A DNA stretch of 64,000 nucleotides from Macrostomum lignano (lineage: Eukaryota), in contig NIVC01000042.1 of the NCBI GenBank assembly GCA_002269645.1, positions 434,001-498,000 on the forward strand. Reading direction: 5' to 3'. The first letter of the stretch is position 1. Every line of letters starts with the position of its first letter. Made by a program: the position numbers and the translations under genes. A model generated the notes under the pieces. It did not search any database, was not told where the DNA came from, and saw only the letters and a program-made list of their open reading frames with translations. Below, in pieces: positions 4,708-41,577 of the stretch.

Positions 4708-6579
4708 ATGGCTACAGCTACTACAAAATTAATGAGCAGTGGTGGCGAAGTCAAGATTAAGGCCATTGTGTCGATACAGAAATGGTACCGCCGATACAGG
4801 GCCCGCCTCGAGGCCAGAAAACGCGTAGCCTGGAGAATCCACCAGAACATCGAGTACTCCAGTGAGAATAATCGCATTAATTTGCAAAACTTTTTCAATG
4901 ACGTACTCAACGTTGGCTCCGAACTGTCCGGATGAGGAGCTGATCGCAATTTTGCTCAGCGTCTTCAAGAGATTGAGTCGAGCGCCAACCGGCAGGAGCG
5001 GGAACTACCTAGTTGGACAAATTTTGAAGATATCGCCGTCGAAACGTCCTACTCGGGGCCTCGGTTGACCTTCCCTCTGAGCGCCACTCAGGTCCAAACT
5101 CTGATAGACCACTTCAGTCAGGGAGGACGGCTGCACGCTCGCTACGTCATGCAGCTGCTGCATGAAGTCCGACTGGAACTCAAGACAAGGCCAAACATTT
5201 ATCGACTCAGCACGAGCATCTCCAAGCAGGTGACTGTGGTCGGAGACCTGCACGGGCAGCTGGAGGATCTGCTGCTCATTTTCTACAAGAACGGCCTGCC
5301 GGACGTCACCAACCCGTACGTGTTCAACGGAGATATCGTCGACCGTGGCTCAAATTCGGTAGAGGTAGCGCTGCTGCTGTTCGCCTGTCAGCTGGTGTGG
5401 CCGACGGCGGTTTTTATCAACCGCGGCAACCATGAAGACCCCATTATTAACCAGAAATACGGCTTCAACAAAGAGATTCACAAAAAGTACAATTTACTAT
5501 CACACAAAGTCGTCGATCTATTTAACGAAGTGTTTTCATGGCTTCCGCTTGCCACAATTATTGATGAGAGCATCTTTGTAGTTCACGGTGGCATCTCGGA
5601 AAACCTGGACCTTGAGCTGCTAGATAAACTTGACAGGCACAAGTACTATTCGCTTTTTTCAAACTCAAAAAATGGAAATGTTGATAAAATGGAATGGGAA
5701 CAAGTGGGAGACTTGTTGTGGAGCGATCCTCACGGGCAGCACGGATCCCAAATCAGCAGCCGCGGCAAAGGCTGCCTCTTTGGACCGGACATCACGGCAA
5801 ACTTCTTGCAGCGGAACCGATTCAAGCTGCTAGTTCGCTCTCACCAGGATCCAATTGATGGATACTGTTATACTCACTGCGAATGTGTGCTGACGATCTT
5901 CTCCGCGTCCAACTACCAGTTCGAGGGCAGCAATCCCGGTGCCTACGTCAGGTTCGACAGCAACGGAAAGCCGGAGATTGTGCGGTTCTGCCCAAACAAG
6001 AAAAACATTAAGCCTCTCGGTCGTCAAATTTTCTGCGCCGAAGACGCCGCTCTGCGCAGCCTTCGGGCGAAAATCGCCGCAAGTAAGACCGAGCTGGTGG
6101 CAACCTTCAGCAAAATGGATTCCCGCAAGACCGGCTGCGTCACCGTCGCCCAGTGGTGCAGCGCGATGGAGTCGGTGCTGAAGTTCAATCTGCCGTGGAG
6201 AATGCTGCGGCCTCATCTGACAGAGCTTACTGCGAACAAACGCGTCATGTACATGACGACCTTCCAGAGAGCAACCCTGCAGAACAGTATGGAAAACACA
6301 TTCTTCCCGTTGCCAGACTTTTCAGTGATGGAAGCCGTTTACAAAAACAAGGAAGAGCTGGAGACCATCTTTCGCATCATGGACCGCGACAACAGCGGCT
6401 ACATCAGTCTGGACGAGTTCAAGGAGTGCTGCCGAGTTCTGGGCCGAGCCACCAAGCGTAACCTGCCTGAAGCCGAGATTGTCGACATGGCCAAAGCGAT
6501 GGACCTCAACAAGGACGGCAGGATCGACTTCAACGAGTTTCTCGAGGCCTTTCGAATTGTCGAGTTTAAGAGCAATTAA
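4708..6579 (+). pseudogene. PPEF: PPEF/rdgC-type Ser/Thr phosphatase with EF hands, copy A; intronless, with one in-frame TGA at 4933-4935 (codon 76)
   Basis: The track ORFs 4555-4935 and 5065-6579 are in the same frame and separated only by the TGA. Motifs: IQ (IQKWYRRYRAR), PPP-family GDLHG, GDIVDRG, GNHE, HGG, SASNY, and two EF hands (DRDNSGYISLDE, DLNKDGRIDFNE). The TGA aligns with GGA (Gly) in copy B. Confidence 0.85.
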
Positions 6580-7818
6580 GTCATGGTGCAGTTGTTAAAG
6601 TTGGACTTTCTATAATCCGCAATTTAAGTTTCATAAACGATGTTGCTACCCATGTGTCCCTGTGTGCGATTTCGGTTTGAGATAACAAGTGTCGGTGAAT
6701 TCATCGTCTCTGAAGTATTTACCAAGAAATTTTTCGTTGCATTTTATAGTTGTTTGCTATTTGCTAGATGCAGATTGGTTGGATTGAAAGGGTAGCTTTT
6801 CCTCTGCATACAAGAATATGCGTGCATTAAGCAACGCATCGCTTATTGCAGTGTGCTGAGGGGTTCGAGAGTGCGTTGGTTGACAATCCGTTCTGTGAAT
6901 TTTAGGCTAAGTTTGAAAACTGCAAAAATCAATGTAGTGCATCTCCGTGATTGCACAATGAGGGCTCATTCATGACTGTTCACTAATGCTCAATGGTGAG
7001 GTGTAAGCGTTAGTGAACTCCGCAAGTAACAATTAGCCAATTTGAATTTTCGGTTTACTAATCTTATTCTAGAGTTTTCTTCTATGGAGCCATGTAAGGG
7101 CCAGTTTCCTGAACCAAATGCACTATAAAGATAGCCATTTCCCCTAACCAGCATTTCCTGTCCTGTCCATAAAAAATTAGATTTTATCCCAAGCATCTAT
7201 TGGCAGCAAAAACTAGGAAGATGGAGGAAGCACAAACGTCTAATCACATAAAACTTCAGCTGTTTCTCAAATCAAACAAATGAAATGCGAAGGAAGGAAA
7301 CTAAAAATCATGGTTAAAATGCCTGTTCCATAATTGAAAATTTGGTATTGGCCCCTAAACAAACAGAATTGAAATTATTTTGCTAAGCATAGGATCCTAG
7401 CTGTCTGCTGCAGTTGGGACAGGTTTGAGTTGCTTAGCACGGCAGGTTATTAGCCTAGGCCACTCATCAAACAATACACATTGTAAAAGCATTAGCTAAC
7501 CAATACACGCTCTGTTTAACTGAGCTGCACAAACAATGCAAGGCAATTCTCGTCAGTTATAACTGTCGCTGAACTGCTTGGTTAATAGGAAGGGCCAAAA
7601 GCTGAGTTGCCCTAAGCAACGAGAGGTGGAAGTCATATATGCTTTATATTGGTCAGAAACTTCCATTTGTTACCAAAGTAAATAGGTGCGCTTGGAGCTT
7701 TCTGATTGGAATGATTGAGCCGGTACAGATCGATTCATTTCCTTGATTGCCTCTCTGTTGAGTTGAGTATAACTGCACAGCAGTCAGTCGCCAAGTCTCC
7801 CCCAGAAACTACCAAGGA

Positions 7819-9519
7819 ATGGACGCCCAGCGCCTACCTCTGTCCGTGATAGTCAAAGAATCCGTGGCCAATACCACAGCTCACGCCATCGGCCGTGTGG
7901 CCCCTACAAGTCGCGCCATTGTGTTGAGGATCTTCTGGCTTCTGGCTTTCTTGAGCTTCCTGGGCCTTCTGCTTAACACCTGCACCGTCTACATTCGACG
8001 CCTGAACAGTCCGAGCGTAAGGTCCGAGTTCCAAGCGGAAAAGGTTCCATTCGAGTTTCCCGATGTCTACTTTTGCAACAGTCTCCAAGCCGCTGGCTCG
8101 TTTATCTACCGACTGAACAGGTCAGAGGCGGACCAGGTGAACATGCCGTTCTATGCTGCTCAGACTGCATTCGATGCCGCTCTCGGATCTCTGAATGCGT
8201 CGGAGAGTGAAAACACAACACTGCGCGAACTTCGGCCAACAAGCTTGATCCAGTCTCTGCCCTACAGAACTCTGGCGGACATTGTGGGTCAGAGAAAGCT
8301 GCAGACATTCTACGGAAACTACGGAATCTTCAGTGCAGGCTCAGATCGCAGTCTGAATTCCCCGATCGCGGTAGAGACGCTGTTCCACCCGAACCATCTG
8401 AAGTGCTTCAAGCTTGCCCTCACCGATGCTGAGTTATCACGCATGCAGAATACGAACAACAGATTGCAGCTCGACCTGCTTCTCGATCCTTACTTCTTTG
8501 ACTTCGATAAGCTTGGCCTGTTTTCAAACCATACAGACCGGCTTCCAACAATGTCTGTTTTCGTATCTGGTCAACAGATAACATTATATCCATTCGACTG
8601 GAACCTGGAGAATCCGATTGGGTTCGATAAAGGCAGTGGAATGTATCTCTACCTGACGCCCAGAGGTCACTACCCGTCTCGATTCACCTCTAATGTGATC
8701 AGCCTGGGTCCCGGTCGAGCCTACGACGTCTCCATCGCAATGCAAGATGCCCAGATGACACCGGCGGACTTTCCCGGCCAGTGCGTTGAGAAACACGACG
8801 ACCCAGTTCTGTTCTTGAACCCGTACAACGGCGCCGCAGATGCGTTCAGCTACAGCGAGGCTCACTGCTACTATTCGGAGATGGCGAGGGACAGACAGCA
8901 GAGGTACAACTGCAGCCCGACACCTGAGCCTACAACCTGGGAGTTTAGACATCTCCCTCTGTGCCTGAACCTCACAGCGGCTGAAACTGAAGAAGAAATT
9001 CATCGAAACATGAAGGCGTCCGTAAAGGCGCGTCTGGATGTCAATGGCGGCAACAGCACGTGGTACGACTTGTGCTCCGCGAAGCGACTGTGCAAGCGAC
9101 GCACTTACTCCGTGACGTCATCTTATGGAATGTGGCCGAACCAAGCGAGTCTCGTTCGTCTGGTGGATAACGTCATTGGCTCTTTGCTGCAACGTGTTGA
9201 TCGATCGCAGTTCAGATCACTCGAGACGGGTGTTGGAACATTGCAGTTTATCGATAAATCAGTGCGTCTTATTGACTTCGAAGACGGAGCGTTGCGCTAC
9301 TTCCGGCGAGCAGCGGTGAGAGTCACGTTGAGAGCAGAAGCAAGTCGAAGCTCTCTGACAACATTCAGCCTTGACTATCGGCTTGGTCAGTTCATCGCGG
9401 ACGTTGGCAGCGCACTTGGTTTGTATCTGGGATGTTCGCTGCTCACCGTGTTGGAGCTGTTCGAGCTGCTGCACAATGTGCTTCTTTTTGCTGTCTGCTG
9501 CAGGCCGGCGTCGAATTGA
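7819..9519 (+). CDS. DEG/ENaC (amiloride-sensitive cation channel) family subunit, copy A, 566 aa, intronless
   Basis: TM1 IFWLLAFLSFLGLLL; post-TM1 FPDVYFCN; Cys-rich thumb; Y..S...WP motif; TM2 FIADVGSALGLYLGCSLLTVLE containing the G-x-S filter. Confidence 0.9.
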   Translation: MDAQRLPLSVIVKESVANTTAHAIGRVAPTSRAIVLRIFWLLAFLSFLGLLLNTCTVYIRRLNSPSVRSEFQAEKVPFEFPDVYFCNSLQAAGSFIYRLNRSEADQVNMPFYAAQTAFDAALGSLNASESENTTLRELRPTSLIQSLPYRTLADIVGQRKLQTFYGNYGIFSAGSDRSLNSPIAVETLFHPNHLKCFKLALTDAELSRMQNTNNRLQLDLLLDPYFFDFDKLGLFSNHTDRLPTMSVFVSGQQITLYPFDWNLENPIGFDKGSGMYLYLTPRGHYPSRFTSNVISLGPGRAYDVSIAMQDAQMTPADFPGQCVEKHDDPVLFLNPYNGAADAFSYSEAHCYYSEMARDRQQRYNCSPTPEPTTWEFRHLPLCLNLTAAETEEEIHRNMKASVKARLDVNGGNSTWYDLCSAKRLCKRRTYSVTSSYGMWPNQASLVRLVDNVIGSLLQRVDRSQFRSLETGVGTLQFIDKSVRLIDFEDGALRYFRRAAVRVTLRAEASRSSLTTFSLDYRLGQFIADVGSALGLYLGCSLLTVLELFELLHNVLLFAVCCRPASN

Positions 9520-13402: not shown

Positions 13403-13659
13403 TATTAAGAAAGCCTTGTTAAGTTATAATGAATCGGCGTTTATTGAGTTTTGAGAAAGATAGCAAAAGAAAGGGTTAACATGGAATTTAGCACTGGCGT
13501 AGCTCAAACAAAACTTAGTGGTGCAGGTAAGGGAGTCGAAAACCATAGATATAATTAAGAAGTCTGTTATAGAAAATTCTAGAAGGAAAACTTGGATTCA
13601 CTTACTATAAATATAAAGTTGACTATTTTAAGATAAACGATTACTTAACATCTTTAACA
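13403..13659 (-). repeat. Copia 3' LTR
   Basis: Direct repeat of 17806-18062. On the minus strand it is preceded by the PPT-like TTAAGTGGGAG (13660-13670). Confidence 0.97.
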
Positions 13660-13757
13660 CTCCCACTTAATGTTTAGCTTAAAAACTAGTGCATCTGGTA
13701 CAAACAGTTCATATTGTGTATTGAATATCAAAGTTAGATAAAGAGTTAGCAGTTACA

Positions 13758-16700
13758 TTAACGAACAGGAATCAGTTCCTTGAGCACTTGAAACTTGGCA
13801 TTAGACAGTGCTTTAGTAAGAATGTCAGCGATCATCTCCTCTGACGGACAGTAAATTAGCTTTAAAGTTCCACCGACCAACTTCTCACGCACGAAATGGT
13901 GACGGATATCAATGTGCTTAGAACGACTGTGGAAGACAGGATTCCTAGCTAGAGCAATACAGCCTTGATTGTCTTCAAGGATAGTAACGTATTTGAGACT
14001 TTCTACGCGAAGATCTAGTAGTAACTGTTGTAACCATGTGGCTTCTTGGGTAGCAGCTGAGAGTGCCATGTACTTGGCCTCCGTCGTCGATAGGGCTACA
14101 GTTTGTTGCTTTTTGCTACTCCAGCTAATTGGACATTCAGCCAACTTGAAGATGTATCTGGTTGTAGAACGTCGGTCATTGTGATCTCCAGCCCAGTCTG
14201 CATCGGAATATCCAATTAGATCGATTGCACGCGAGTCCTTCTGAAAAACCAATCCTGATGAAATGGTTCCCTTTAGATATCTCAGGACACGCTTCACGCC
14301 ACTCCAATGCTGTTCAGTTGGGTCTGAGCAATATCGCGCGAGAACTCCCACTGCAGATGACACATCTGGTCGTGTAGCTAGTGCTGCGTAGTTTAGACTT
14401 CCTACTGCCGCCTGATACATAGTCTTGTCCACCTTAGCATCACAGGTCTGTGTAGTGTAGAATTTGACACTTGTGTCCATTGGTGTTGATACCGGTTTGC
14501 AGTCCATCATGTTGAATTTAGAAAGGATGTTATTTAGATACCGCTCTTGGTTTAGAAACAATGAGCCATTCTTCCAGGTAGCTTGAATTCCAAGAAAATA
14601 GTGAAATTCGCCTAGATCCTTCATCTTAAATTTAGATTGCAGTTCTTGCTTCAGCACGGGCATGTAGTCGTCAGATGCTGTTAATAGAATGTCGTCCACA
14701 TACACACCGATCGCAGATTGAGAGTTAGCATAGATACACGGTTCTGACTTTGCCTGCACTAGGTTAAGACTTAAAAGTTCATCATGTAGAGTTTGATTCC
14801 AACATCTAGGAGCCTGCTTGAGTCCATATAGACTTCTTTCTAGTTTGCATACTAGTGTTTCCTTGCCTTGCACCACAAATCCTTCCGGTTGTTCCATGTA
14901 AATTTCTTCGTCTAGTTTGCCATTTAAAAATGCTGTTACGACATCCATCTGGTGAATTTTCCAATCTCGTTGAACTCCAACAGCCAGTAGAGTTCTAATT
15001 GATGTAAATCGAGCTACTGGTGCATACGTCTCCTCATAATCTACTCCATGCTCTTGAGAGTATCCTTTGACTACCAATCTTTCTTTGAATCTGTCTACTG
15101 AGTTGTCTGCCTTATACTTGACACGAAATACCCACTTACAGCCAATAGTTTGACGTCCTTTTGGTAGCTCAACCAGTTTCCATGTCCTGTTCTCCATCAG
15201 TGACTCGTACTCTGCGTTCGCAGCCTCTTGCCAGTCTTTAGAGAATGAGCTGTCCAATGCTTGCTGTAGAGTTTTCGGTTCGTCAATTTGTGTTGCAACG
15301 GATGCCACGTACCTGTCAACGGGCTTCTTCTCTCGAGTTGATCTCCGAACTTCTTGCTTGTCGACAGTTTCAGGAACACATTTAAAATCAGACGATGCTG
15401 GTTCGGTACCTGCATTCAGTTGAAGTGTCTCCTGCTTCTCCACTAATTGCTTCACGAAGCACGACTCTTGGAACGTTACATCGCGACTGACAAAAACTGA
15501 TCGTGTTTGGAAATCAAAACAACGATATCCTTTTGAGGTTTCCGAGTATCCAATAAATCTGACTTCCCGAGCTTTTGAGTCAAACTTGTGACGTTTCTCA
15601 GCTGGGACATGCGCGTAGGCAACGCATCCAAATACTCGCAAATGCTGAACACTCGGCTTGCTGCCGGTCCAAATTTGATATGGTGTCGCTTTGTTGACTG
15701 CACTCGTTATTGATCGATTATGCAGATATGTTGCCGTAGAGATTGCTTCTGCCCAGAATTCCTTGCCAATATGAGCATGTGCAATCATTGTTCGTGCTGC
15801 CTCCACCAAGGTTCGGTTCATTCTCTCGGCTACTCCGTTCTGTTCAGGAGAGTGTGGGACTGTAGTCTGGTGAATGATTCCGTTTCGGGCACAGAATGCC
15901 TCAAATTCTCCCGATGTATACTCTCCACCATTGTCAGTCCGAAGAATCTTGATAGACTTGTCTGTTTGATTCGTGACGAGAGCCTGAAAGATCTTTAATT
16001 TTTCTAAGACTTCTGACTTACTTTTAATGAAGTAAACTGAGCAATAGCGCGAATAGTCGTCAATAAATGTGACAAAATACTTTGATCCTCCAATTGACGT
16101 AGTTTTCATGGGACCGCACACGTCACTGTGAATTAGACCCAATAGTTCAGTTGACCTTGACGTTTCACCCTTTGCAAATGGCGTTCGATGTAGCTTTCCT
16201 TCCACACATGCTGTGCAGAAACTGATGCCTTCAGTTTTTACGTCATCCTTGCTAAGCTCAATTCCGTCCACTTGCTTTCCATTAATTAGAGATTTCAGGT
16301 CTTGCTCACCTAGGTGTCCAAAGCGCTGATGCCATAGGTCGATGCTGTTGTTTCTCGCGACAGATGCAGTCTCGTTAGTTAGGTTAAAGCCTTTCAATTT
16401 GTACAGTCTGCCAACTTTCAAAGCTTCTCCAACAATCTTACCAGTTGCGCTCAAAATCTGACACTTGTCGTCGCTGAATTGTACACTGAAGCCTTTTCTT
16501 GTAACTGCTGATACGGAGAACAAATTCTGTTCCATAAGTGGTACATATAGAACGTCGCTCAGCTCGCACAATTTCTTACCAGAACCAGTATTGATATACA
16601 ACCGAACGGTTCCCTTTCCAGTGGCTTCGAGCTTATGTCCATCTGCTAGCGAAATGTTCTCCAGTACCGAAAAATCTTCAAATTTCTCAAAACTTGTCCG

Positions 16701-17651
16701 ATCATTAGTCATATGATTCGTTGCGCCTGAGTCCACAATCCATGTACTAGACTCGTTAGCTGTCGATGATGTGCCTATAGACAACGCCGGAAATGCAGAA
16801 TCTTCCTCATCTGAAGCTGAAAAGTCCTTTAAGTCTTTTGCTAGGGCGTCTGCAATCCTCGCCTGATGCCTTCTGTTAGATTTCTTCAAATCATGTGGTC
16901 TTGAATTCGTGCTCGATCCACCTGTCACAGAGAGGCTATTCTTGAATTTGTAACAGTGCTTCTTTAGGTGACCAGGCTTATTGCAGAAAAAACATACTTT
17001 TGGTCTGACACTCTGGTGCTGTTGCCTCTTGAATCCAACCAGAGCCTTTGAATTGCTGCTAGGTTCACAGCTTTCCTGTTCAAGTCGTTTTGACTCCTCA
17101 TGCAAAAGCCGCTCGAGTACGAAATTCATCGTCAAGTCGTCCGCTCGCGATTCCAGGGCAGTAATCAACCCGTCATATGACTTCGGCAAACTGTTTAGCA
17201 GAATCGTGACTTGATAGTCCTCGGGAACACCTGCCCCGATAGCCGACAGTCGTTTGACGATATCCTTGAACTGATTAACATGCTCCTGCATGGATGCACC
17301 TTCCACCATCTTGAGCGCTTGTAGTTTCCGATTAAGAAACAATTTATTTGCCAGCGAACTCCGCTCGAAATATGCTTGAAGCTTATCCCACGCTTCCTTC
17401 GGAGTTTCTGCATCCTCAATTAGATGAATTTGACTATCCGCAACAGCCAATACGATAGTCGCTAGGGCTTTGTTCGCACGCCGCTTGAACTGAACTTTGA
17501 CCTCGTTGGTCGCGTCCTCAGCAAGTGTCTCTGTACCATCAACAACTTCCCAAAGTTCTCGCTCCATCAGGACGTTCTTCATCTTGAACTTCTAGACAGT
17601 GTAGTTGGAACTATCCAACTTCTCAACCAGTAGTTTGGCATCGAAAGACAT
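13758..17651 (-). pseudogene. Copia Gag-Pol polyprotein with an in-frame TAG at codon 20 (17592-17594); open from 17582 to 13758
   Basis: Starts MSFDAKLLVEKLDSSNYTV*KFKMKNVL. Motifs: zinc knuckle CFFCNKPGHLKKHC; protease DSGA; integrase HHCC with HSDVCGP / TDNGGEY / ERMNRT; RT YVDD; RNase H YSDADWAG...EDNQG...ADILTK. Confidence 0.93.
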
Positions 17652-17793
17652 CGTGTCGATCCACCAGCACAACTGGACTGCTGAGCTTGAACTTTCTAAG
17701 AGACGGTAGAGCCTGACAATCACACCAACTGACGCACTGCCACTGAAGCAGCTTTATTATTCACACTGCAGTAGATCGCAGTGGAGGGGCGCA

Positions 17794-17805
17794 GGGCCCA
17801 TAACC
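17794..17805 (-). promoter_or_regulatory. Copia primer-binding site GGTTATGGGCCC (internal tRNAiMet type)
   Basis: Immediately follows the 5' LTR. It is complementary to the GGGCCCATAACC anticodon arm of tRNAiMet, the half-tRNA priming mode known for Drosophila copia. Confidence 0.9.
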
Positions 17806-27875: not shown

Positions 27876-27989
27876 GTGAGTTGCCGTTTCACAATGTTTA
27901 TATATTCATTCATCCACTTTTAATGGGTCTACGTGTGCGCATTGAGCGCTTCAGGTGCGCCTTTGGCTTTGTTGTACCGTTGTTGGGCA

Positions 27990-29522: not shown

Positions 29523-29838
<316 letters not shown>

Positions 29839-30846
29839 GAGATAGAGAGATGAGAAACACGCAAAATCACAAATTTTATTGAGCTAGCTATATATGAAAT
29901 ATTATTATTAGCCAGAGGAGAGAGAGAGGGAGGGAGGGAACGGACTGAGACTTACGAACGGTCTGTGTGTCTATCTGTCCGTCTCTGTGTGCTTTAGTTT
30001 TGTCCGTCTTTCTGACTTAATGATGACTCTCTGCCTGTTAGTCTATCTGTATGTATCTCTGCCTGTCGATTTGGCTTTTCTGTATGAGTAACCCTATATG
30101 TGATTGTCTATTTGCAAAGCTTTCAACTGTCTGTCCTTTAACCAGCTGCTGTGTCTGTCTTACTTTAGGCTGCACGCAATTATCCATAAATTAGAGCGAG
30201 TCAGCTCAGTCCAGTTGCAGTTGCAGTGAGTCAGATTCTCTTGTCAAGCTCAGACTATCTGCTTCTCCGTTTCTCAAGCAGCAGTAATCAGCATCAGTCG
30301 TTCATGCTTTCTCGAAAAAATCGCGACTTAAACTGTGGGAATGAGGGGGGTTACTGTTAAACTAACTGGTTGCTCCGGTTTCTTGACAGTCATCAACTCG
30401 CCTGCTCGTAATTCGCTTCTAGGCCTACACAGTACACAGCGACTCGTGGGATGGATGGGCCAGAGAACGCAAACATTTGAGCCTAAATGTTTGCGTTCTC
30501 TTAGACAAATCGAAGCGCAGGCATAGCAGACTGGCGAGTTTTACAAGTCTCGAAGCGACCAAAGATTAGAAAATATTTTTCCCTAGGTTTCAGACTTACA
30601 TGCCATTCTTAAAAGCGCTTAGCGACGAATTACGTAATTTTCCAAGGTATTCTATAAATAGCTTAACGACTGACGTCATTCGCTATGGCGTTCTAAAAAT
30701 AGCTCGGCGTATGGCGTCATCTCTATGACATTCTAAAAATAGCTCAGCGGCTGACGTCATTCTCTATAACATTCTAAAAATAGCTCATCGTCCGGCTTTG
30801 TTCTGTAAAAACATTTGCCTCACTTTTCGCTACGTCCGCTCCTCAG

Positions 30847-31050
30847 ATTCGCGGCCAACTAGCTGAGAAGGCCTCCCGTCGGACCAGGATTCTCACCTGG
30901 CTGAGCCTGTCCTACATGGGCGTGCAGTTCGGCGTGCTTGCCCGGCTAACCTGGTGGGAATACAGCTGGGATATTATGGAGCCGGTCACGTACTTTGTTG
31001 GCTACGGCACGGCCATAGCCTGCTATGCCTACTATGTGCTCACTAAGCAG
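30847..31050 (+). CDS. MCU: Mitochondrial calcium uniporter, exon 3 (TM1 - WDIMEP - TM2)
   Basis: CTCAG|[68 protein letters not shown]|GTAAG. The DIME filter is intact (WDIMEP at 30967-30984). This exon is absent from the ORF track. Confidence 0.97.
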
Positions 31051-31174
31051 GTAAGAGGTCTTTGTTGATTGGATCATTTTATTGCTTAAATAGCAGTCTT
31101 TAGAACCTACGTTATAGGATAAAATTGTTCTGTAAAAACTTGGACGAGAATCGTCCAAAGCTACCATCAAATGC

Positions 31175-32005
31175 TAAACCTCACTGAGAATCCCCCCTAA
31201 ACCTCACTGAGAATCGCCCCTAAACCTCACTGTGAATCGCCCCTAAACCTCAGAGAATCGCCCCTAAACCTCACTGAGAATCGCCCCTAAACCTCACTGA
31301 GAATCCCCCCTAAACCTCACTGAGAATCGCCCCTAAACTTCACTGATAATCCCCCCTAAACCTCACTGAGAATCCCCCTAAACCTCACTGAGAATCGCCC
31401 CTAAATCTCACTGAGAATCCCCCTAAACCTCACTGAGAATCGCCCCTAAATCTCACTGATAATCCCCCCTAAACCTCACTGAGAATCGCCCCTAAACTTC
31501 ACTGATAATCCCCCCTAAACCTCACTGAGAATCCCCCTAAACCTCACTGAGAATCGCCCCTAAACCTCACTGAGAATCCCCCTAAACCTCACTGAGAATC
31601 GCCCCTAAATCTCACTGATAATCCCCCCTAAACCTCACTGAGAATCGCCCCTAAACCTCACTGAGAATCGCCCCTAAACCTCACTGAGAATCCCCCCTAA
31701 ACCTCACTGAGAATCGCCCCTAAACCTCACTGAGAATCCCCCCTAAACCTCACTGAGAATCCCCCCTAAACCTCACTGAGAATCGCCCCTAAACCTCACT
31801 GAGAATCGCCCCTAAACCTCACTGAGAATCGCCCCTAAACCTCACTGAGAATCGCCCCTAAACCTCACTGAGAATCGCCCCTAAACCTCACTGAGAATCG
31901 CCCCTAAACCTCACTGAGAATCGCCCCTAAACCTCACTGAGAATCCCCCCTAAACCTCACTGAGAATCGCCCCTAAAACCTCACTGAGAATCGCCCCTAA
32001 AGCCC
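31175..32005. repeat. 23-bp minisatellite (TAAACCTCACTGAGAATCGCCCC)n in MCU intron 3
   Basis: Period 23 (GAGAATC at 31801 and 31824); about 36 copies. Confidence 0.95.
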
Positions 32006-32404
32006 CTAAGCTATCGCTCGATCTCCTATCCACCCTATTCCTTCGAGCGTACTTGCCCTCGGTACTTAATTCATCATCTCTGTTATCTCAAAACTCTCAC
32101 CGCACTCTCGTAAAAGACTCCCTTTTCGCTGGCCATAATGCAGTCCGGCCCTCTTGATATTGATTCTTTAGGAAAAAAAATTCTCTTGCTTCCATCTTCG
32201 TCTTCCTCTTACGAGTAGGCCCTATCTAGTTCGTTTCCCCCCTAGGGATTACTATACATCGCTAGATCCCATGGATTCGTCTCGTCTCGGAACTCTGCTC
32301 TTCTGCTCTTTGATGTACCGGTACGTATGCCGGCCACTTAATTCTTGAGTCGGATGTTCCAGGCCCTTATCTCTCTCGCTAAGCCCGATGTACTTTCTAA
32401 CTTT

Positions 32405-33050
32405 CAGCTCGCTGGATGCTTAAGTTCTGTGGGGAATCCGTTTGCTGTATGCTTAAGTGCGGTGGAGAATCCCCTTGCTCGATGCTTAAGTGCAATGGGG
32501 AATCTTCTTGCTGGATGCTTAAGTGCAATGGGGAATCCCCTTGCTGGATGCTTAAGTGCAATGGGGAATCCCCTTGCTAGATGCTTGTGTGCGGTGGGGA
32601 ATCCCCTTGCTGGATGCTTAAGTGCGGTAGGGAATCGCCTTGCTGGATGCGTGTGTGCGGTGGGGAATCCGTTTTGCTGGATGCTTTAGTGCGATGGGGA
32701 ATCGCCTTGCTGGATGCGTGTGTGCGGTAGGGAATCACCTTGTTTGATGCTTAAGTGCGGTAGGGAATCACCTTGCTGGATGCTTGTGTGCGGTGGGGAA
32801 TCCCCTTTGCTGGATGCTTGTGTGCGGTGGGGAATCCCTTATGCTGGATGCTTGTGTGCCGTAAGGATTCCCTTTCGCTGGATGCTTGTGTGCCGTAAGG
32901 ATTCCCTTTCGCTGGATGCTTGTCTGCGGTCGGGAATCCCTTTTGCTGAATTCTTAAGTGCGGTGGGGAATCCCCTTGCTGACTGCTTATGATGAATACC
33001 CGTACTCGATGCTTGAGTTCAGTTGGGAAATCCCCTTACTGGATGCCTGT
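32405..33050. repeat. Degenerate 33-bp minisatellite (TGCTGGATGCTTAAGTGCAATGGGGAATCCCCT)n in MCU intron 3
   Basis: Recurrent GCTGGATGCTT...GGGGAATCCCC at roughly 33-bp spacing. Confidence 0.85.
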
Positions 33051-33186
33051 CCAAGGGCGTGCCTTAAACCTGGATGTCGTTTATAAAGGAAATTCTCATT
33101 AATAATGATAAGGCGTCTAAACAGGCTTCTACTCTTGGACTCTCAGTTGCCACCGCCCCCCCCCCCCCAATGCCCCGCCAACGCAG

Positions 33187-33399
33187 GAGTACACTTTCCC
33201 GGCCGTGTGGGACCGCGAGTATTTGAAGAAATTCTACAAAGACGCCGACAAGAGCAGCTTCAATGTTGAACAGTACAACGAGCTTCGCCAGCGAATCAAC
33301 GACGTCCAGTCCGACCTGCGGCGGCTGCGCGACCCCCTGATGCTTGGCCTGCCGCTGCAGCAGGAGAAACTGATGAAGCCGCAGCCAGAGCAGCAGTAA
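33187..33399 (+). CDS. MCU: Mitochondrial calcium uniporter, exon 4 (terminal)
   Basis: GCAG|EYTFPAVWDREYLKKFYKDADKSSFNVEQYNELR...LRRLRDPL...*. The four exons total 954 nt, giving 317 aa plus stop, with consistent phases. Confidence 0.92.
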   Translation, partial: EYTFPAVWDREYLKKFYKDADKSSFNVEQYNELRQRINDVQSDLRRLRDPLMLGLPLQQEKLMKPQPEQQ

Positions 33400-36219: not shown

Positions 36220-38082
36220 TTATTTGTTCTTAAACTCGACAATTCGAAAGGCCTCGAGAAACTCGTTAAAGTCGATCCTGCCGTCCTTGTTGAGGTCCAT
36301 CGCTTTGGCCATGTCGACAATCTCGGCTTCAGGCAGGTTACGCTTGGTGGCTCGGCCCAGAACTCGACAGCACTCCTTGAACTCGTCCAGACTGATGTAG
36401 CCGCTGTTGTCGCGGTCCATGATGCGGAAAATGGCCTCCAGCTCTTCCTTGTTTTTGTAAACGGCCTCCATTACTGAAGCATCTGGCAGTGGGAAGAATG
36501 TGTTCTCCATATTATTCTGCAGGGTTGCTCTCTGGAAGGTCGTCATGTACATGACGCGTTTGTCTGCTGTCAACTCCGCAAGATGAGGCCGCAGCATTCT
36601 CCACGGCAGGTCAAACTTCAGCTCCGACTCCATCGCGCTGCACCACTGGGCGACGGTGACGCAGCCGGTCTTTCGGGAATCCATTTTGCTGAAGGCTGCC
36701 ACCAGCTCGGTCTTACTTGCGGCGATTTTCGCCCGAAGGCTGCGCAGAGCGGCGTCTTCGGCGCAGAAAATTTGACGACCGAGAGGCTTAAGGTTTTTCT
36801 TGTTTGGGCAGAACTGCACAATCTCCGGCTTTCCGTTGCTGTCCAACTTAACGTAGGCACCGGGATTGCTGCCCTCGAACTGGTAGTTGGACGCGGAGAA
36901 GATCGTCAGCACACATTCGCAGTGAGTATAACAGTAGCCATCAATCGGGACCTGATGAGAGCGAACTAGCAGATTTAATCGGTTCCGCTGCAAGAAGTTT
37001 GCCGTGATGTCCGGCCCAAAGAAGCATCCAATGTTACGCTCGTTGTTGAATTGGCAGCCCAGCTCCGGTTGAGGATCACTCCACAAAACGTCTATTATCT
37101 GTTGTTGTTCCATTTTGTTTACCGCTTTATTTCCAGAACCAGGAATCAGGGAATAGTACTTGTGCCTGTCAAGTTTATCCAGCAGCCCGAGGTCCACACT
37201 GTCGGAGATGCCACCGTGAACTACAAAGATGCTCCCGTCAATCATCGTGGCAATGGGAAGCCACGAGAACACCTCATTAAATAATCCAATGATTTTCGGA
37301 AATGTGTCTTGGTACTTTGTCTTAACTTCGTCTGTGAAGCCATACCTTATATTTATGGTTGCATCTTCATGGTTGCCGCGGTTGATAAAAACTGCCGTCG
37401 GCCACACCAGCTGACAGGCGAACAGCAGCAGCGCTACCTCTACCGAATTTGAGCCACGGTCGACGATATCTCCGTTGAACACGTACGGGTTGGTGACGTC
37501 CGGCAGGCCGTTCTTGTAGAAAATGAGCAGCAGATCCTCCAGCTGCCCGTGCAGGTCTCCGACCACCGTCACCTGCTTGGAGATGCTCGTGCTGAGTCGA
37601 TAAATGTTTGGCCTTGTTTTGAGTTCCAGTAGGACTTCATGCAGCAGCTGCATGAGGTAGCGAGCGTGCAGCCGTCCTCCCTGACTGAAGTGGTCTATCA
37701 GAGTTTGGACCTGAGTGGCGCTCAGAGGGAAGGTCAACCGAGGCCCCGAGTAAGAATCTTCTACATCAAAGTCTTCAAAACTTGCCAAATTGATATTATC
37801 TTGCTTCGGCTGGATAGACACGCTTTTGAACTCTTGGAGCCGTTGAACAAAGCTACAGCCAATTCCTCCGGCGGAAAGTTCAGCGCCAAGCTCGAGTAAA
37901 TCTTCAAGGAAGTTCTGCAAGTGAATTCGGTTCCGTTCGCTGGCGTACTCGATTTTCTCGTAGATTTTCCATTCTGCCCGTCGTCTTGCCTCTAGGCGGG
38001 CCTTGTACCGGCGGTACCATGACTGAATGAGCACAATCGCTCTTATACTGGTCCTGCCGCGGCCTTGCGAAATCGTGGACAT
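36220..38082 (-). CDS. PPEF: PPEF/rdgC-type Ser/Thr phosphatase with EF hands, copy B, 620 aa, intact, intronless
   Basis: IQ motif (IQSWYRRYKAR), GDLHG / GDIVDRG / GNHE / HGG / SASNY and two EF hands in one uninterrupted ORF. Confidence 0.93.
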   Translation of the reverse strand: MSTISQGRGRTSIRAIVLIQSWYRRYKARLEARRRAEWKIYEKIEYASERNRIHLQNFLEDLLELGAELSAGGIGCSFVQRLQEFKSVSIQPKQDNINLASFEDFDVEDSYSGPRLTFPLSATQVQTLIDHFSQGGRLHARYLMQLLHEVLLELKTRPNIYRLSTSISKQVTVVGDLHGQLEDLLLIFYKNGLPDVTNPYVFNGDIVDRGSNSVEVALLLFACQLVWPTAVFINRGNHEDATINIRYGFTDEVKTKYQDTFPKIIGLFNEVFSWLPIATMIDGSIFVVHGGISDSVDLGLLDKLDRHKYYSLIPGSGNKAVNKMEQQQIIDVLWSDPQPELGCQFNNERNIGCFFGPDITANFLQRNRLNLLVRSHQVPIDGYCYTHCECVLTIFSASNYQFEGSNPGAYVKLDSNGKPEIVQFCPNKKNLKPLGRQIFCAEDAALRSLRAKIAASKTELVAAFSKMDSRKTGCVTVAQWCSAMESELKFDLPWRMLRPHLAELTADKRVMYMTTFQRATLQNNMENTFFPLPDASVMEAVYKNKEELEAIFRIMDRDNSGYISLDEFKECCRVLGRATKRNLPEAEIVDMAKAMDLNKDGRIDFNEFLEAFRIVEFKNK

Positions 38083-39029
38083 GTTTTCAAGCGAACTTCG
38101 CCTCTAACAATTTAACTCCAGTGATCATGTAAACGTCTTGTACAATGTAAATAATCATTTCATTTGGTCTATGGTCACTAGCGTTTAATTTGTAAAACGC
38201 CACTAAAATAGGTATGGAAAATAATTAGTCAAGGGACCTTGGAGTACATTCTAGCCTCTGCTTATTCTCTGGACGATTTTTTTAGAGATTTAACAAATGA
38301 TTGTCTCGGTCAGCGTGCCATTTTCAGATTAAGCAACAGTGTATAGGGTGGGTATGTACAGTTCGGTTTCATTCTTTGCTGTGTAGTTTTATTGTTTGAT
38401 TTTTCTGAAATCGATCACATAGATACCTAGATACCGACAAACCATTTTTAATATATGGAATGCGATTTCTTTTATCTAAGCTATTGATACCATCCGTAGC
38501 ATTATCTAAAATTGTAACCAGCCTTCGAATGCATGGTGGGCTGTGCAACTGAGCACCTTGAAGCGGTCTACGAGCTAGTTTCTTGGGCGAGCCAAAGTTG
38601 AGCTAAATTCCATTTTATTTGCAATATTACTGCCTAAAAGACAATGGAAAGGGGAGAGCAGCTCAACGGTAAACGCGTTGGACTCTTGCGCTACGACCCC
38701 GGGTCGATTTATTGTGTTGTGCTGTAAAAAATGGCCGGGGTTTGTCGTGCAATTCACATCAATGAAAGCCCTAAAAAATTCCCAACGCACAAGAGAGTGT
38801 ACATGCCTGCGTACAGTATTGGCGCGCTTGTATGAATATGTGCTTAGTTGTCAGCGGAATAGGCGGAATTGCCTCAGCGCTGGTATTGGGACGACGTCGC
38901 CAAAAGCGTAGCGCCAGGGTGACCGCGGCCCTCCTGCAGTTCTACTATTCACAACGCAAGGTAGTCTGAATGATTTACTCGTATACCTACATTACAGGTA
39001 GCCTGATGCTATTTGCGATGTGCGTCTTG

Positions 39030-39731
39030 TACTTTGTCATACCGAATGTAGGAATAATGGATAGGGATTCCAAAATCTCGACAATTTACAATCCCGGGAT
39101 TGAGAAATCCTGAAATCCCGATGGGTTAAAATCCCGGGATCACTAATCTCGGAAAATACCGACTGAGAGTAATCCCGGGATCCCGCTTCGAAGTTCAAAA
39201 AAATCTCGGGATCCCGGGATCCCTATATCAAATGTATTGAAACAGCTGCATCCAGCTTCCACCACGACCACGATTTCAATCCCTGGATTTTTTGGGACTT
39301 GAAATTTCGGGATTTATGATCCTCGGGATTACAACAGTGCGGGATTGGGATCCCGGGATTGTAAGGCTTAAATCCCGGGATTGTTTCGGGATTCAAAATG
39401 ATTTTAATTCTCTTTTTTTCAAATTTCTTTATACATTGGAACAAAAATTGAGCTCACGTAGGCAGCCAAACACGCTGAGCCAACTGAGCGAGACGCCAAT
39501 AAAAGAGGCAACGGCGCAGAGGCTAAAGCCCACCCCACCAGGCCACCACCCTACGCACGCAGAGCCAAAGCACCCCCCACACAGCGCGGACAGAGGGAGA
39601 GAGAGAATGTACGCAAGGCGACAAGGCCGGGCAGAGAAGAGGGGTTTAAAACTGGTTATTGACTAGTCAAGACCAGTCACAAACCAACACACCTAATGCT
39701 ACTTTGTCATACCGAATGTAGGAATAATGGA
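39030..39731. repeat. 32-bp perfect direct repeat (39030-39061, 39700-39731) flanking a 638-bp composite insert
   Basis: TACTTTGTCATACCGAATGTAGGAATAATGGA occurs twice. The insert contains an ATCCCGGGAT-rich segment bounded by TAGGGAT...ATCCCTA (39062-39224) and an LTR-like fragment. Confidence 0.8.
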
Positions 39732-39867
39732 GTGTTTATTATGTTTCAAGTAATTTCTTTACACAGTTGGAACAGACATCATAAAGCTAACTAACCACTC
39801 CACAGTTCCAGAAAAGTTCAGTTTGTACTACGTCATGCATAGTGCCAAACCGCTATTGTTGAGAGCG

Positions 39868-41577
39868 CTATAGCAGTCGTTTGCGCTGACGACCAATGCA
39901 TGCTGCACGGATAAGCATGTAGTGCAACAGTTCAAACAGCTCCAGCACGGTGAGCAGCGAACATCCCAGATACAAACCAAGTGCGCTGCCAACGTCCGCG
40001 ATGAACTGACCAAGCCGATAGTCAAGGCTGAATGTTGTCAGAGAGCTTCGAGTTGCTTCTGCTCTCAACGTGACTCTCACCGCTGCTCGCCGGAAGTAGC
40101 GCCCTATTCCGGTCTCGAACGGGACCAAATTAATGCTTCTATACAAAAAGTTCAGTGTTTTAACACCCGTATCGAGTGATCTGAACTGCTATCGATCAAC
40201 ACGTTGCAGCAAAGAGCCAATGACGTTATCCACCAGACGAACGAGACTCGCTTGGTTCGGCCACATTCCATAAGATGACGTCACGGAGTAAGTGCGTCGC
40301 TTGCACAGTCGCTTCGCGGAGCACAAGTCGTACCACGTGCTGTTGCCGCCATTGACATCCAGACGCGCCTTTACGGACGCCTTCATGTTTCGATGAATTT
40401 CTTCTTCAGTTTCAGCCGCTGTGAGGTTCAGGCACAGAGGGAGATGTCTAAACTCCCAGGTTGTAGGCTCAGGTGTCGGGCTGCAGTTGTACCTCTGCTG
40501 TCTGTCCCTCGCCATCTCCGAATAGTAGCAGTGAGCCTCGCTGTAGCTGAACGCATCTGCGGCGCCGTTGTACGGGTTCAAGAACAGAACTGGGTCGTCG
40601 TGTTTCTCAACGCACTGGCCGGGAAAGTCCGCCGGTGTCATCTGGGCATCTTGCATTGCGATGGAGACGTCGTAGGCTCGACCGGGACCCAGGCTGATCA
40701 CATTAGAGGTGAATCGAGACGGGTAGTGACCTCTGGGCGTCAGGTAGAGATACATTCCACTGCCTTTATCGAACCCAATCGGATTTTCCAGGTTCCAGTC
40801 GAATGGATATAATGTTATCTGTTGACCAGATACGAAAACAGACATTGTTGGAAGCCGGTCTGTATGGTTTGAAAACAGGCCAAGCTTATCGAAGTCAAAG
40901 AAGTAAGGATCGAGAAGCAGGTCGAGCTGCAATCTGTTGTTCGTATTCTGCATGCGTGATAACTCAGCATCGGTGAGGGCAAGCTTGAAGCACTTCAGAT
41001 GGTTCGGGTGGAACAGCGTCTCTACCGCGATCGGAGAATTCAGACTGCGATCTGAGCCTGCACTGAAGATTCCGTAGTTTCCATAGAATGTCTGCAGTTT
41101 TCACTGACCCACAATGTCCGCCAGAGTTCTGTAGGGCAGAGACTGGATCAAGCTTGTTGGCCGAAGTTCGCGCAGTGTTGTGTTTTCACTCTCCGACGCA
41201 TTCAGAGATCCGAGAGCAGCATCGAATGCAGTCTGAGCAGCATAGAACGGCATGTTCACCTGGTCCGCCTCTGACCTGTTCAGTCGGTAGATAAACGAGC
41301 CAGCGGCTTGGAGACTGTTGCAAAAGTAGACATCGGGAAACTCGAATGGAACCTTTTCCGCTTGGAACTCGGAATTTACGCTCGGACTGTTCAGGCGTCG
41401 AATGTAGACGGTGCAGGTGTTAAGCAGAAGGCCCAGGAAGCTCAAGAAAGCCAGAAGCCAAAAGATCCTCAGCACAATGGCGCGACTTGCAGGGGCCACA
41501 CGGCCGATGGCGTGAGCTGTGGTATTGGCCACGGATTCTTTGACTATCACGGACAGAGGTAGGCGCTGGGCGTCCAT
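39868..41577 (-). pseudogene. DEG/ENaC subunit, copy B; two in-frame premature stops (TGA 41101-41103, codon 159; TAG 40189-40191, codon 463), no frameshift
   Basis: The three track ORFs are in one frame and colinear with copy A. AGA->TGA and TCG->TAG are single-base changes relative to copy A. Confidence 0.9.

What the first reader, a model, noticed from the sequence alone, without database searches (positions are those of the whole stretch)
4708..41577. Two PPEF + DEG/ENaC gene pairs on opposite strands with permuted gene order, bracketing MCU
On +, transcription order is PPEF-A then ENaC-A, 1.24 kb apart. On -, it is ENaC-B then PPEF-B, 1.79 kb apart (about 1.1 kb without the 670-bp duplicated-end insert). 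One inverted duplication would keep PPEF upstream in both pairs, so it cannot produce this layout. Homology also appears confined to the coding exons plus ~50 nt upstream. The two unrelated genes therefore ended up as close same-strand neighbours twice, or derive from a permuted tandem or circular intermediate. Inference: a maintained channel + Ca2+/calmodulin-regulated phosphatase module.
Basis: partly seen in the sequence, partly recalled or inferred. Interest (0 to 1): 0.75.

Follow-up and report, generated by a model that had tools for sequence, protein, structure and literature searches.

The report
Old flatworm paralog pairs exchanging sequence
Two neighbouring phosphatase + ion-channel gene pairs in the flatworm Macrostomum lignano are real and do sit in swapped order, but they are ancient local duplicates that keep copying stretches of sequence onto each other, which is ordinary genome evolution and not evidence of a functional gene module.

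Summary
The window is Macrostomum lignano contig NIVC01000042.1 (Mlig_3_7), bases 434001-498000. It reads PPEF-A(+) 4708-6579, ENaC-A(+) 7819-9519, MCU(+) 19144-33399, PPEF-B(-) 36220-38082, ENaC-B(-) 39868-41577. The same layout is on two other contigs, which match the three published subgenomes, so it is not a mis-join or haplotig artefact.

A/B homology is confined to the two coding regions plus 53 nt upstream of ENaC. The reason is age plus gene conversion. PPEF is a mosaic: divergent patches have dS about 1.1 and dN 0.32, while intervening tracts have dS 0.06. In the divergent patches A is no closer to B than to PPEF paralogs on another contig. ENaC has almost no fixed A/B differences over its first 1380 nt, and 13 polymorphisms are shared between the A and B copies.

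One inverted duplication indeed cannot give this order. An old tandem array plus inversions can, and one of those could be recombination between the ENaC copies.

The "maintained module" inference is not supported:
- Five other PPEF or DEG/ENaC loci show no such pairing.
- The ENaC ORFs have no transcript-based gene call.
- In this window PPEF-A and ENaC-B carry in-frame stops.

Interest is low.

The parts
4708..6579 (+). PPEF-A coding region (623 codons, single exon). It carries an in-frame TGA at 4933-4935 (codon 76) in this contig only.
   Evidence: The same gene is intact (GGA at that codon) on NIVC01000458.1 and NIVC01001313.1. Full-length Pfam: IQ (below cut-off), Metallophos, EF-hands.
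5068..5427 (+). PPEF conversion tract 1, with no fixed A/B differences. Further tracts lie at about 5788-6147 and 6328-6579. Divergent patches lie at 4708-5067 and 5428-5787.
   Evidence: dS is 0.06 in the tracts against 1.14 in the divergent patches.
6580..7765 (+). A-pair spacer, with no homology to the B-pair spacer.
7766..7818 (+). 53-nt leader shared by ENaC-A and ENaC-B. The homology starts within 1-2 nt after an AG in both copies.
7819..9519 (+). ENaC-A coding region (566 aa, intact, single exon). It is a divergent DEG/ENaC with an FPDVYFCN post-TM1 motif and a GCS filter motif in TM2.
   Evidence: The closest proteins are only 27-31% identical M. lignano paralogs.
13403..18062 (-). Copia-type LTR retrotransposon with identical 257-bp LTRs and a 1274-aa gag-pol ORF. 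It is a bystander insertion between ENaC-A and MCU.
   Evidence: The site is empty in both other subgenome copies.
19144..33399 (+). MCU (mitochondrial calcium uniporter). Exon pieces lie at 19144-19446, within 27522-27920, within 30784-31065, and at 33205-33399. The introns are filled with minisatellites.
36220..38082 (-). PPEF-B coding region (620 aa, intact, single exon).
   Evidence: It is annotated as Mlig032497.
38083..39867 (-). B-pair spacer. It contains 32-bp direct repeats at 39030-39061 and 39700-39731. The spacer is structurally variable between subgenome copies: about 4 kb on NIVC01001313.1.
39868..41577 (-). ENaC-B coding region (569 codons) with in-frame stops TGA at 41103-41101 and TAG at 40191-40189. 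B-specific unconverted patches lie at about 40160-40100 and at the 3' end, 39955-39868.
   Evidence: The copy on NIVC01001313.1 is intact, and the copy on NIVC01000458.1 is identical to the window.
41578..41631 (-). B copy of the shared ENaC leader.
42591..43439 (+). WSC-domain gene flanking the B pair. It has no counterpart near the A pair.
   Evidence: L003 4644-5492 mapped to the window through.

Best explanation
PPEF-A/B and ENaC-A/B are ancient local paralogs in the Macrostomum lignano genome. They now lie as interleaved inverted repeats around MCU. They undergo ongoing interlocus (ectopic) gene conversion, which keeps long coding tracts 94-100% identical while everything else has diverged beyond recognition.

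Shown:
- The layout is real and predates the split of the three M. lignano subgenomes.
- Homology is a mosaic of near-identical and saturated tracts, also at synonymous sites.
- Alleles are shared between the A and B channel genes.

Inferred:
- Both genes were duplicated together long ago, most simply as a tandem P-E-P-E array. PPEF tandem duplicates exist elsewhere in this genome.
- The present order arose by later inversions. One inversion of the distal [ENaC + MCU] segment gives P> E> P> <M <E. One recombination between the two now-inverted ENaC copies flips [P <M] and gives exactly the observed P> E> M> <P <E. A single complex template-switching event, or an inverted copy of the E-P junction followed by loss, would also do.
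- Adjacency of the two families is therefore inherited once, not assembled twice, and needs no selection for a module.
- After the recent polyploidisation, redundant copies are decaying. This explains the stops in PPEF-A and ENaC-B on this contig.
For: Identity and reality of the layout:
- L003 from NIVC01000042.1 matches window 26220-48082 at 100%.
- The same order and orientation, PPEF-A, ENaC-A, MCU, PPEF-B, ENaC-B, is on NIVC01000458.1 (L002 + L004) and NIVC01001313.1 (L006 + L001). These copies differ from the window by 1-3% and carry different TE insertions.
- This matches the three subgenomes S, L1 and L2, which differ by 1.9-2.4% SNPs (PMC10733133).

Mosaic structure:
- Fixed A/B differences in PPEF number 126 in nt 1-360, none in 361-720 and 107 in 721-1080.
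- ENaC has one fixed difference in nt 1-1380, then dense patches.

Synonymous divergence:
- Divergent PPEF patches have dS 1.14 and dN 0.32.
- Converted tracts have dS 0.06 and dN 0.005.

Other support:
- A runs test on third codon positions gives p about 8e-4 for PPEF and 1e-4 for ENaC.
- In unconverted patches A-B amino-acid identity (53-60%) is no higher than A against the paralogs C1/C2 on another contig (55-60%). In converted parts A-B is 94-98% against 61-82%.
- 13 sites in ENaC are polymorphic in both the A and the B genes across the three subgenome copies.
- There is no other homology between the flanks and no relic copies.
- A PPEF tandem pair exists at L005.
Against: - The path of rearrangements cannot be reconstructed. 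At dS > 1 all breakpoints are erased, and no outgroup genome could be searched.
- Both ancient pairs have kept a 1.2-4 kb same-strand adjacency, which is also what selection for linkage would give.
- All three subgenome copies show the same flip state, so no recombination-driven inversion was caught in the act.
- The contigs of this assembly are partly chimeric between subgenomes (PMC10733133). The assignment of alleles to locus copies is therefore uncertain, although the sharing of alleles between A-type and B-type genes does not depend on that assignment.
Confidence: 0.75

Rival explanations
1. A selected functional module or operon. The Ca2+/calmodulin-regulated phosphatase and the channel are kept adjacent on the same strand because they are co-transcribed or co-regulated, in either order. 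Possibly they form SL trans-spliced bicistronic units.
For: - Both ancient pairs retain same-strand adjacency at 1.2-1.8 kb.
- PPEF shows purifying selection in divergent patches, with dN/dS about 0.28.
- M. lignano has SL trans-splicing for about 30% of genes and operons for about 15% (PMC8629364).
- The A/B ENaC homology starts right after an AG 53 nt upstream of the ATG. This could be an acceptor site.
Against: - Four other DEG/ENaC loci and the other PPEF locus lack the pairing within 10 kb.
- The ENaC ORFs have no gene call in the transcript-based annotation on any of three contigs, while both PPEFs do (PMC5730564).
- The spacers exceed the 1-kb operon threshold and tolerate insertions: 1.24-1.59 kb for A and 1.8-4.0 kb for B.
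- No YTNCAG acceptor motif lies within 200 nt upstream of ENaC-A, ENaC-B or PPEF-B.
- In this contig one member of each pair has stop codons.
- The top-ranked papers in a search combining PPEF with ENaC or degenerin did not mention PPEF.
Confidence: 0.1
2. Recent gene-sized duplications. Each gene would have been copied separately, by retroposition of the intronless mRNAs or by transposon capture, and then diverged quickly in patches.
For: - Homology is restricted to the transcribed or coding part of two single-exon genes.
- A Helitron remnant lies 17 kb away at 58446-62812.
Against: - dS of 1.1 in the divergent PPEF patches cannot be recent.
- In those patches A is as far from B as from paralogs on another contig.
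- There is no 3'UTR homology and no poly(A) tract. ENaC homology stops before the stop codon and PPEF homology stops at it.
- Two unrelated retrocopies landing side by side, 30 kb from their parents, is very improbable.
- Other DEG/ENaC and PPEF paralogs are also single-exon, so intronlessness is a family trait.
Confidence: 0.05
3. Independent convergent juxtaposition. Unrelated PPEF and DEG/ENaC paralogs became neighbours on two separate occasions.
For: The gene order differs between the pairs and the spacers are unrelated.
Against: - The two pairs lie only about 30 kb apart. Each gene's closest relative, even in the unconverted ENaC patch at about 50% against 27-31% for other paralogs, is its partner in the other pair.
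- A local duplication of both genes is far more parsimonious.
- No such adjacency was seen at five other loci.
Confidence: 0.03
4. Assembly artefact: a mis-join in the satellite-rich 19-33 kb interval, or haplotigs placed on one contig.
For: - The interval between the pairs is packed with minisatellites.
- 36% of Mlig_3_7 assembly length is in chimeric scaffolds (PMC10733133).
Against: - Three contigs that differ by 1-3% and by TE insertions carry the same order and orientation. One MCU gene call bridges the A and B sides on NIVC01001313.1.
- A and B are not alleles, given dS > 1 in patches and unrelated flanks.
- The window contains no N.
Confidence: 0.02

Closest known systems
Interlocus (ectopic) gene conversion between inverted paralogs, as in the arms of human Y-chromosome palindromes or the inverted repeats flanking FLNA/EMD and F8 int22h (from established knowledge)
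   Same: - The copies are inverted and lie tens of kb apart on one chromosome.
- Near-identical tracts alternate with diverged ones, also at synonymous sites.
- Alleles are shared between the paralogs.
- Such repeats can also flip the intervening segment by recombination.
   Different: - The repeats here are only the coding regions of two unrelated genes.
- The two repeat pairs are interleaved (P E ... P E), not nested as a palindrome (P E ... E P).
- No inversion polymorphism was seen among the three subgenome copies.
PPEF / rdgC / pef-1 family of protein phosphatases with EF-hands
   Same: - IQ motif, PPP catalytic domain with GDLHG, GDIVDRG and GNHE, and C-terminal EF-hand pair.
- 42-48% identity to annotated PPEF2 and pef-1 from many phyla.
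   Different: The family is expanded in M. lignano to at least four single-exon paralogs (A, B, C1, C2). The IQ match of copy A is below the Pfam cut-off.
DEG/ENaC (amiloride-sensitive sodium channel, Pfam ASC) family
   Same: - Full-length ASC match (E about 1e-31).
- N- and C-terminal hydrophobic segments.
- FPxVxxCN after TM1 and a G-x-S motif in TM2.
   Different: - Very divergent lineage-specific clade. Only 142 representatives out of 1.84 billion score E <= 1e-3, and the best named relatives are 27-31% identical M. lignano paralogs.
- The N-terminal His-Gly motif reads His-Ala.
- The ORFs are not annotated in the public gene set.
SL trans-spliced operons of M. lignano (PMC8629364)
   Same: Two unrelated genes lie on the same strand, a short distance apart.
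   Different: - The distances are above the 1-kb repeat-adjusted threshold.
- There is no transcript model for the channel gene.
- The gene order is not conserved between the pairs.
- Trans-splicing could not be tested here.

Membership tests
PPEF/rdgC phosphatases | PPP-type metallophosphatase catalytic domain with the GDxHG, GDxVDRG and GNHE motifs | tested here: met
   PF00149 at E about 1e-28 in both copies. The motifs VVGDLHGQ, NGDIVDRG and NRGNHED can be read in the translations.
PPEF/rdgC phosphatases | C-terminal EF-hand Ca2+-binding pair | tested here: met
   EF-hand_1 and EF-hand_7 at E 1e-18 to 1e-20 in A and B.
PPEF/rdgC phosphatases | N-terminal IQ calmodulin-binding motif | tested here: inconclusive
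   PF00612 scores 20.8 bits in B, just above the 20.3 cut-off. It scores 16.2 bits in A, below the cut-off.
DEG/ENaC channels | Full-length match to the ASC profile, with two transmembrane segments flanking a large Cys-rich ectodomain | tested here: met
   PF00858 covers profile positions 3-455 of 455 at E 8e-32 (A) and 3.5e-32 (intact B from L001).
DEG/ENaC channels | G/S-x-S selectivity-filter motif in TM2 and the conserved N-terminal His-Gly gating motif | tested here: inconclusive
   GCS is present in TM2 (..LYLGCSLLTV..). The N-terminal motif reads TAHAIG, His-Ala instead of His-Gly. Channel activity was not tested.
Interlocus gene conversion | Alternating near-identical and divergent tracts, also at synonymous sites | tested here: met
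   dS is 0.06 against 1.14. Runs test p is about 1e-3 to 1e-4. See the fixed-difference map.
Interlocus gene conversion | Segment-dependent phylogeny relative to other paralogs | tested here: met
   A-B identity is no higher than A-C1/C2 in divergent patches, but far higher in converted tracts.
Interlocus gene conversion | Polymorphisms shared between the paralogs | tested here: met
   13 sites in ENaC and 4 in PPEF are polymorphic in both A-type and B-type genes across three subgenome copies.
M. lignano SL operon | Same-strand neighbours with a repeat-adjusted intergenic distance below 1 kb | tested here: not met
   The raw distances are 1239 nt (A) and 1785 nt (B), and up to about 4 kb in another subgenome copy. 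The B distance falls to about 1.1 kb without the 670-bp unit. No repeat annotation was available for an exact adjustment.
M. lignano SL operon | Downstream gene SL trans-spliced, and a read-through precursor transcript | not testable with these tools
   No RNA-seq access. Indirect evidence only: there is no gene call for the ENaC ORFs in the transcript-based annotation, and no YTNCAG motif upstream of the downstream genes.

The most novel reading that the evidence does not exclude
In Macrostomum, a PPEF phosphatase and a lineage-specific DEG/ENaC channel form a co-regulated sensory unit, possibly bicistronic. Its linkage would have been preserved by selection in two ancient paralogous pairs despite rearrangement of their order. 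This would imply a previously unknown functional link between PPEF/rdgC-type phosphatases and DEG/ENaC channels.
Probability: 0.08. Interest if true: 0.55.

Novelty: new member of a known kind. Interest (0 to 1): 0.22.

Why it matters
This is mainly a cautionary case. "Homology confined to the coding exons" between nearby paralogs looked like evidence for repeated recruitment of two genes. It is in fact the signature of old duplicates homogenised by gene conversion.

It documents active interlocus conversion, and reciprocal decay of redundant copies, in the neopolyploid M. lignano genome. It also flags two long, conserved DEG/ENaC ORFs that are missing from the public annotation.

If the low-probability module reading were true, it would point to a new regulatory pairing of a Ca2+-dependent phosphatase with a DEG/ENaC channel.

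Tried and rejected
1. Relics of extra PPEF or ENaC copies that would reveal a former E-P-E array. tblastn of both proteins against the whole window at E <= 10 found nothing beyond the four genes.

2. Deeper homology between the flanks of the two pairs. tblastx of 1-13400 against 33001-50000 found none. Word-7 blastn of the two spacers gave only chance-level hits.

3. The divergent 60-nt patch in ENaC as an intron. Rejected: it is in frame and type-specific in all six copies.

4. Alternative genetic code or read-through for the in-frame stops. Rejected: the orthologous codons are GGA, AGA and TCG in the other copies.

5. Homology search with ENaC-A in the 5.8-billion-protein collection. It gave nothing at E <= 1e-10 and the exact protein is not on record. 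The exhaustive HMMER search was needed to find relatives.

6. Trans-splice acceptor and poly(A) motif scans were uninformative.

The exons were found from ORF translations instead.

8. My first reading of the L001 comparison mixed two loci held in one file. This was corrected.

9. The species behind the 55%-identical Logan fragment (SRR31628394) could not be determined.

10. The literature search for a PPEF and DEG/ENaC link: the top-ranked of the 839 papers holding at least two of the three terms did not mention PPEF.


Full report
**What the window is.** PPEF-B (36220-38082, -) is 98% identical to a Macrostomum lignano protein. An exact-protein look-up returned a locus from GCA_002269645.1 contig NIVC01000042.1 that matches window 26220-48082 at 100%. 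The window is therefore bases 434001-498000 of that contig of the Mlig_3_7 assembly, in + orientation. It contains no N.

**The observation.**
- PPEF-A is one reading frame, 4708-6579 (+).
- ENaC-A is an intact 566-aa ORF at 7819-9519 (+), 1239 nt downstream.
- PPEF-B is an intact 620-aa ORF at 38082-36220 (-).
- ENaC-B runs 41577-39868 (-), upstream of PPEF-B by 1785 nt.
- MCU lies between the pairs on the + strand. Its exon pieces are at 19144-19446, within 27522-27920, within 30784-31065 (the [11 protein letters not shown] pore motif) and at 33205-33399. Its introns are filled with minisatellite arrays.

The layout is thus P_A> E_A> MCU> <P_B <E_B, followed by a WSC-domain gene (+).

Self-BLASTN finds only two inverted homology blocks between the two regions:
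- 4758-6579 vs 38045-36220, 86.8% identity.
- 7768-9483 vs 41629-39913, 97.2% identity.

Neither the spacers (word-7 blastn) nor the wider flanks (tblastx) share anything else. In ENaC, homology starts 53 nt upstream of the ATG and fades about 35 nt before the stop. In PPEF, it starts about 50 nt inside the coding region and ends at the stop codon. The 32-bp direct repeats 670 bp apart in the B spacer are real.

- PPEF-A carries an in-frame TGA at 4933-4935. B and the other A copies have GGA there.
- ENaC-B carries an in-frame TGA at 41103-41101 and a TAG at 40191-40189. ENaC-A has AGA and TCG there.
- So in this contig each pair consists of one intact gene and one interrupted gene.

**Not an assembly artefact.** The whole arrangement occurs three times in the assembly:
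- on the window's contig;
- on NIVC01000458.1, where L002 is the A side and L004 the B side;
- on NIVC01001313.1, where L006 is the A side and L001 the B side, with a single MCU gene call bridging them.

The copies are collinear with the window at 97-100% identity. They differ by transposon insertions, and the Copia element at 13403-18062 is absent from both other copies, which show a clean empty site. This matches the published finding that Mlig_3_7 holds three homeologous subgenomes (S, L1, L2) that differ by 1.9-2.4% in SNPs (PMC10733133). The layout therefore predates the subgenome split.

The nonsense mutations are copy-specific:
- PPEF-A is intact on the other two contigs.
- ENaC-B is intact on NIVC01001313.1.
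- ENaC-B is identical to the window, with both stops, on NIVC01000458.1.

This is the pattern expected for decay of redundant copies after polyploidisation.

**Why homology is confined to coding sequence.** I aligned all six copies of each gene, three A and three B. The fixed A/B differences are strikingly patchy.
- PPEF has 126 fixed differences in nt 1-360, none in 361-720, 107 in 721-1080, few in 1081-1320, none in 1321-1440, and almost none after 1620.
- ENaC has one fixed difference in nt 1-1380, then 31 in 1381-1500, none in 1501-1620, and 42 at the 3' end.

Nei-Gojobori estimates for PPEF give dS 1.14 and dN 0.32 in the divergent patches, against dS 0.06 and dN 0.005 in the intervening tracts. 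The contrast therefore holds at synonymous sites and cannot be due to protein-level constraint. A permutation test of the longest identical run at third codon positions gives p about 8e-4 for PPEF and 1e-4 for ENaC.

In the divergent patches PPEF-A is no closer to PPEF-B (53% and 60% amino-acid identity) than to two further PPEF paralogs on contig NIVC01000493.1 (55-60%). In the homogeneous parts A-B is 94-98%, against 61-82% to those paralogs.

Thirteen ENaC sites and four PPEF sites are polymorphic in both the A-type and the B-type genes across the three subgenome copies. This requires exchange between the paralogs around or after subgenome divergence.

Together these are the three classical signatures of interlocus gene conversion acting on ancient duplicates. 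At dS > 1, non-coding flanks would be unalignable, so the "coding-only" homology needs no further explanation.

**The permuted order.** An inverted duplication of P>E> gives <E<P, not <P<E. I also checked that recombination between the inverted copies cannot convert a palindromic layout into the observed one, because the palindrome is closed under such flips.

The observed layout is instead a pair of interleaved inverted repeats. It is one recombination flip between the two ENaC copies away from P> E> P> <MCU <E. That state in turn is a plain tandem P-E-P-E array in which the distal [E + MCU] segment has been inverted. So a tandem duplication plus two inversions suffices, and the second inversion is of exactly the kind promoted by the 1.4 kb of 99-100% identical inverted ENaC sequence.

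Other routes would also do: an inverted copy of the E-P junction of a tandem array followed by loss of one unit, or a single complex template-switching event. This part is inference. The breakpoints are erased, all three subgenome copies are in the same state, and no outgroup genome could be searched. Tandem duplication of PPEF does occur in this genome. The locus of the 64%-identical paralog carries a second, unannotated PPEF copy 3.8 kb downstream.

**Is it a maintained module?** The evidence is mostly against.
1. Adjacency is not a property of the families. Four other DEG/ENaC paralog loci (L007, L009, L010, L011) have no PPEF within 10 kb, and the other PPEF locus has no DEG/ENaC.
2. The Mlig_3_7 gene set is transcript-based, with a cut-off of RPKM >= 0.5 (PMC5730564). 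Both PPEFs have gene calls (Mlig002821 g1-g3, Mlig032497). The ENaC ORFs have none on any of the three contigs, and their proteins are absent from the 15-billion-protein collection.
3. The spacers are longer than the 1-kb criterion used for M. lignano operons (PMC8629364). They vary from 1.24 to 1.59 kb for A and from 1.8 to about 4 kb for B among subgenome copies.
4. No trans-splice acceptor consensus lies within 200 nt upstream of the downstream genes.
5. In this contig one partner of each pair is broken.
6. The top-ranked papers in a literature search combining PPEF with ENaC or degenerin did not mention PPEF.

In favour of a module there is only the retention of close same-strand adjacency in both old pairs. 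There is also the fact that ENaC homology starts right after an AG that might be an acceptor site. Retention of a 1-2 kb adjacency is expected without selection.

**The genes themselves.** Both PPEF copies have the family's architecture. It comprises an IQ motif, a PPP catalytic domain with GDLHG, GDIVDRG and GNHE, and two C-terminal EF-hands. The IQ match is weak in A. They are 42-48% identical to annotated PPEF2 and pef-1 proteins from many phyla.

The channel genes match the full ASC profile and have FPDVYFCN after TM1 and GCS in TM2, but His-Ala in place of the usual His-Gly. They belong to a very divergent clade:
- only 142 of 1.84 billion representatives score E <= 1e-3;
- the best named relatives are M. 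lignano paralogs at 27-31% identity;
- one unnamed 381-aa fragment from SRA run SRR31628394 is 55% identical.

**Verdict.** The locus is best explained as ancient local paralogs in interleaved inverted orientation undergoing gene conversion, replicated three times by recent polyploidy and now decaying copy by copy. That is a new instance of well-known processes. The functional-module reading keeps a probability of about 0.1 and can be tested with the existing RNA-seq, SL and poly(A) tracks and with outgroup synteny.

Noticed in passing
window 13403-18062 (-): Copia-type LTR retrotransposon with 100% identical 257-bp LTRs and an uninterrupted 1274-aa gag-pol ORF. It is absent, with a clean empty site, from the two homeologous contigs. 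It is therefore a very recent insertion and possibly still active.
   Followed up: partly
window 51279-54121: A short LTR-type element with 100% identical 258-bp terminal direct repeats and a 734-aa ORF (DUF1759 gag-like plus a partial reverse transcriptase). It is inserted inside a 24/48-bp minisatellite that continues on both sides (50923-51278 and 54122-54314).
   Followed up: partly
window 58446-62812 (-): Helitron remnant. ORFs with Helitron_like_N, PIF1 helicase and the Pif1 2B domain are split over several frames.
   Followed up: partly
window 19504-33000; also 45384-46676, 49556-50536, 56950-58185: At least eight large minisatellite arrays (periods 20-68 bp, 0.3-1.5 kb each) fill the introns of MCU and stretch a 4-exon gene over 14 kb. 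The two 23-bp arrays at 45.4 kb and 49.6 kb belong to one family.
   Followed up: partly
window 7819-9519 and 39868-41577; L001 4316-6025; L002 13464-15164; L006 13112-14812: The 566-570-aa DEG/ENaC ORFs are not annotated on any of the three Mlig_3_7 contigs. No identical or near-identical protein exists in the 15-billion-protein collection. They are either very weakly expressed or missed genes.
   Followed up: partly
L002 10001-11754 (protein P0003, Mlig002821g3); same region as window 6150-6460: The public gene model for PPEF-A follows the ORF for 504 residues, then switches into the +1 frame and loses both EF-hands. This is either a small frame-shifting splice in the transcript or an annotation artefact.
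   Followed up: partly
L005 10067-11887 and 15523-17580 (NIVC01000493.1): A second, unannotated PPEF copy lies in tandem 3.8 kb downstream of the annotated paralog Mlig030419g2. The PPEF family has at least four single-exon members in this genome.
   Followed up: partly
L004 4401-12194 vs window 43690-35889; L002 8345-12134 vs window 3051-6841: Contig NIVC01000458.1 is 99.7-100% identical to the window on the B side but only 98.8% identical on the A side. ENaC alleles of its A side match the B side of NIVC01001313.1. This is consistent with subgenome-chimeric contigs or with recombination between homeologs.
   Followed up: no
window 39030-39061 and 39700-39731; L001 about 6162-6221 and 9008-9072: The 32-bp direct repeat in the B spacer bounds 670 bp in the window, but the equivalent sequences bound about 2.85 kb in the homeologous copy. 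It looks like an element with terminal direct repeats and variable content. I did not identify it.
   Followed up: partly
window 2102-2444 and 3104-3393: A 103-163-bp pair of inverted repeat segments (86-90% identity) about 0.7-1.2 kb apart, upstream of PPEF-A. Possibly a small foldback or MITE-like element.
   Followed up: no
L008 (Logan SRR31628394 contig, 1362 nt): The only protein above 31% identity to the ENaC pair is a 381-aa fragment (55%) from an unidentified sequencing run. It is presumably from a related flatworm and would be a lead to an outgroup.
   Followed up: no
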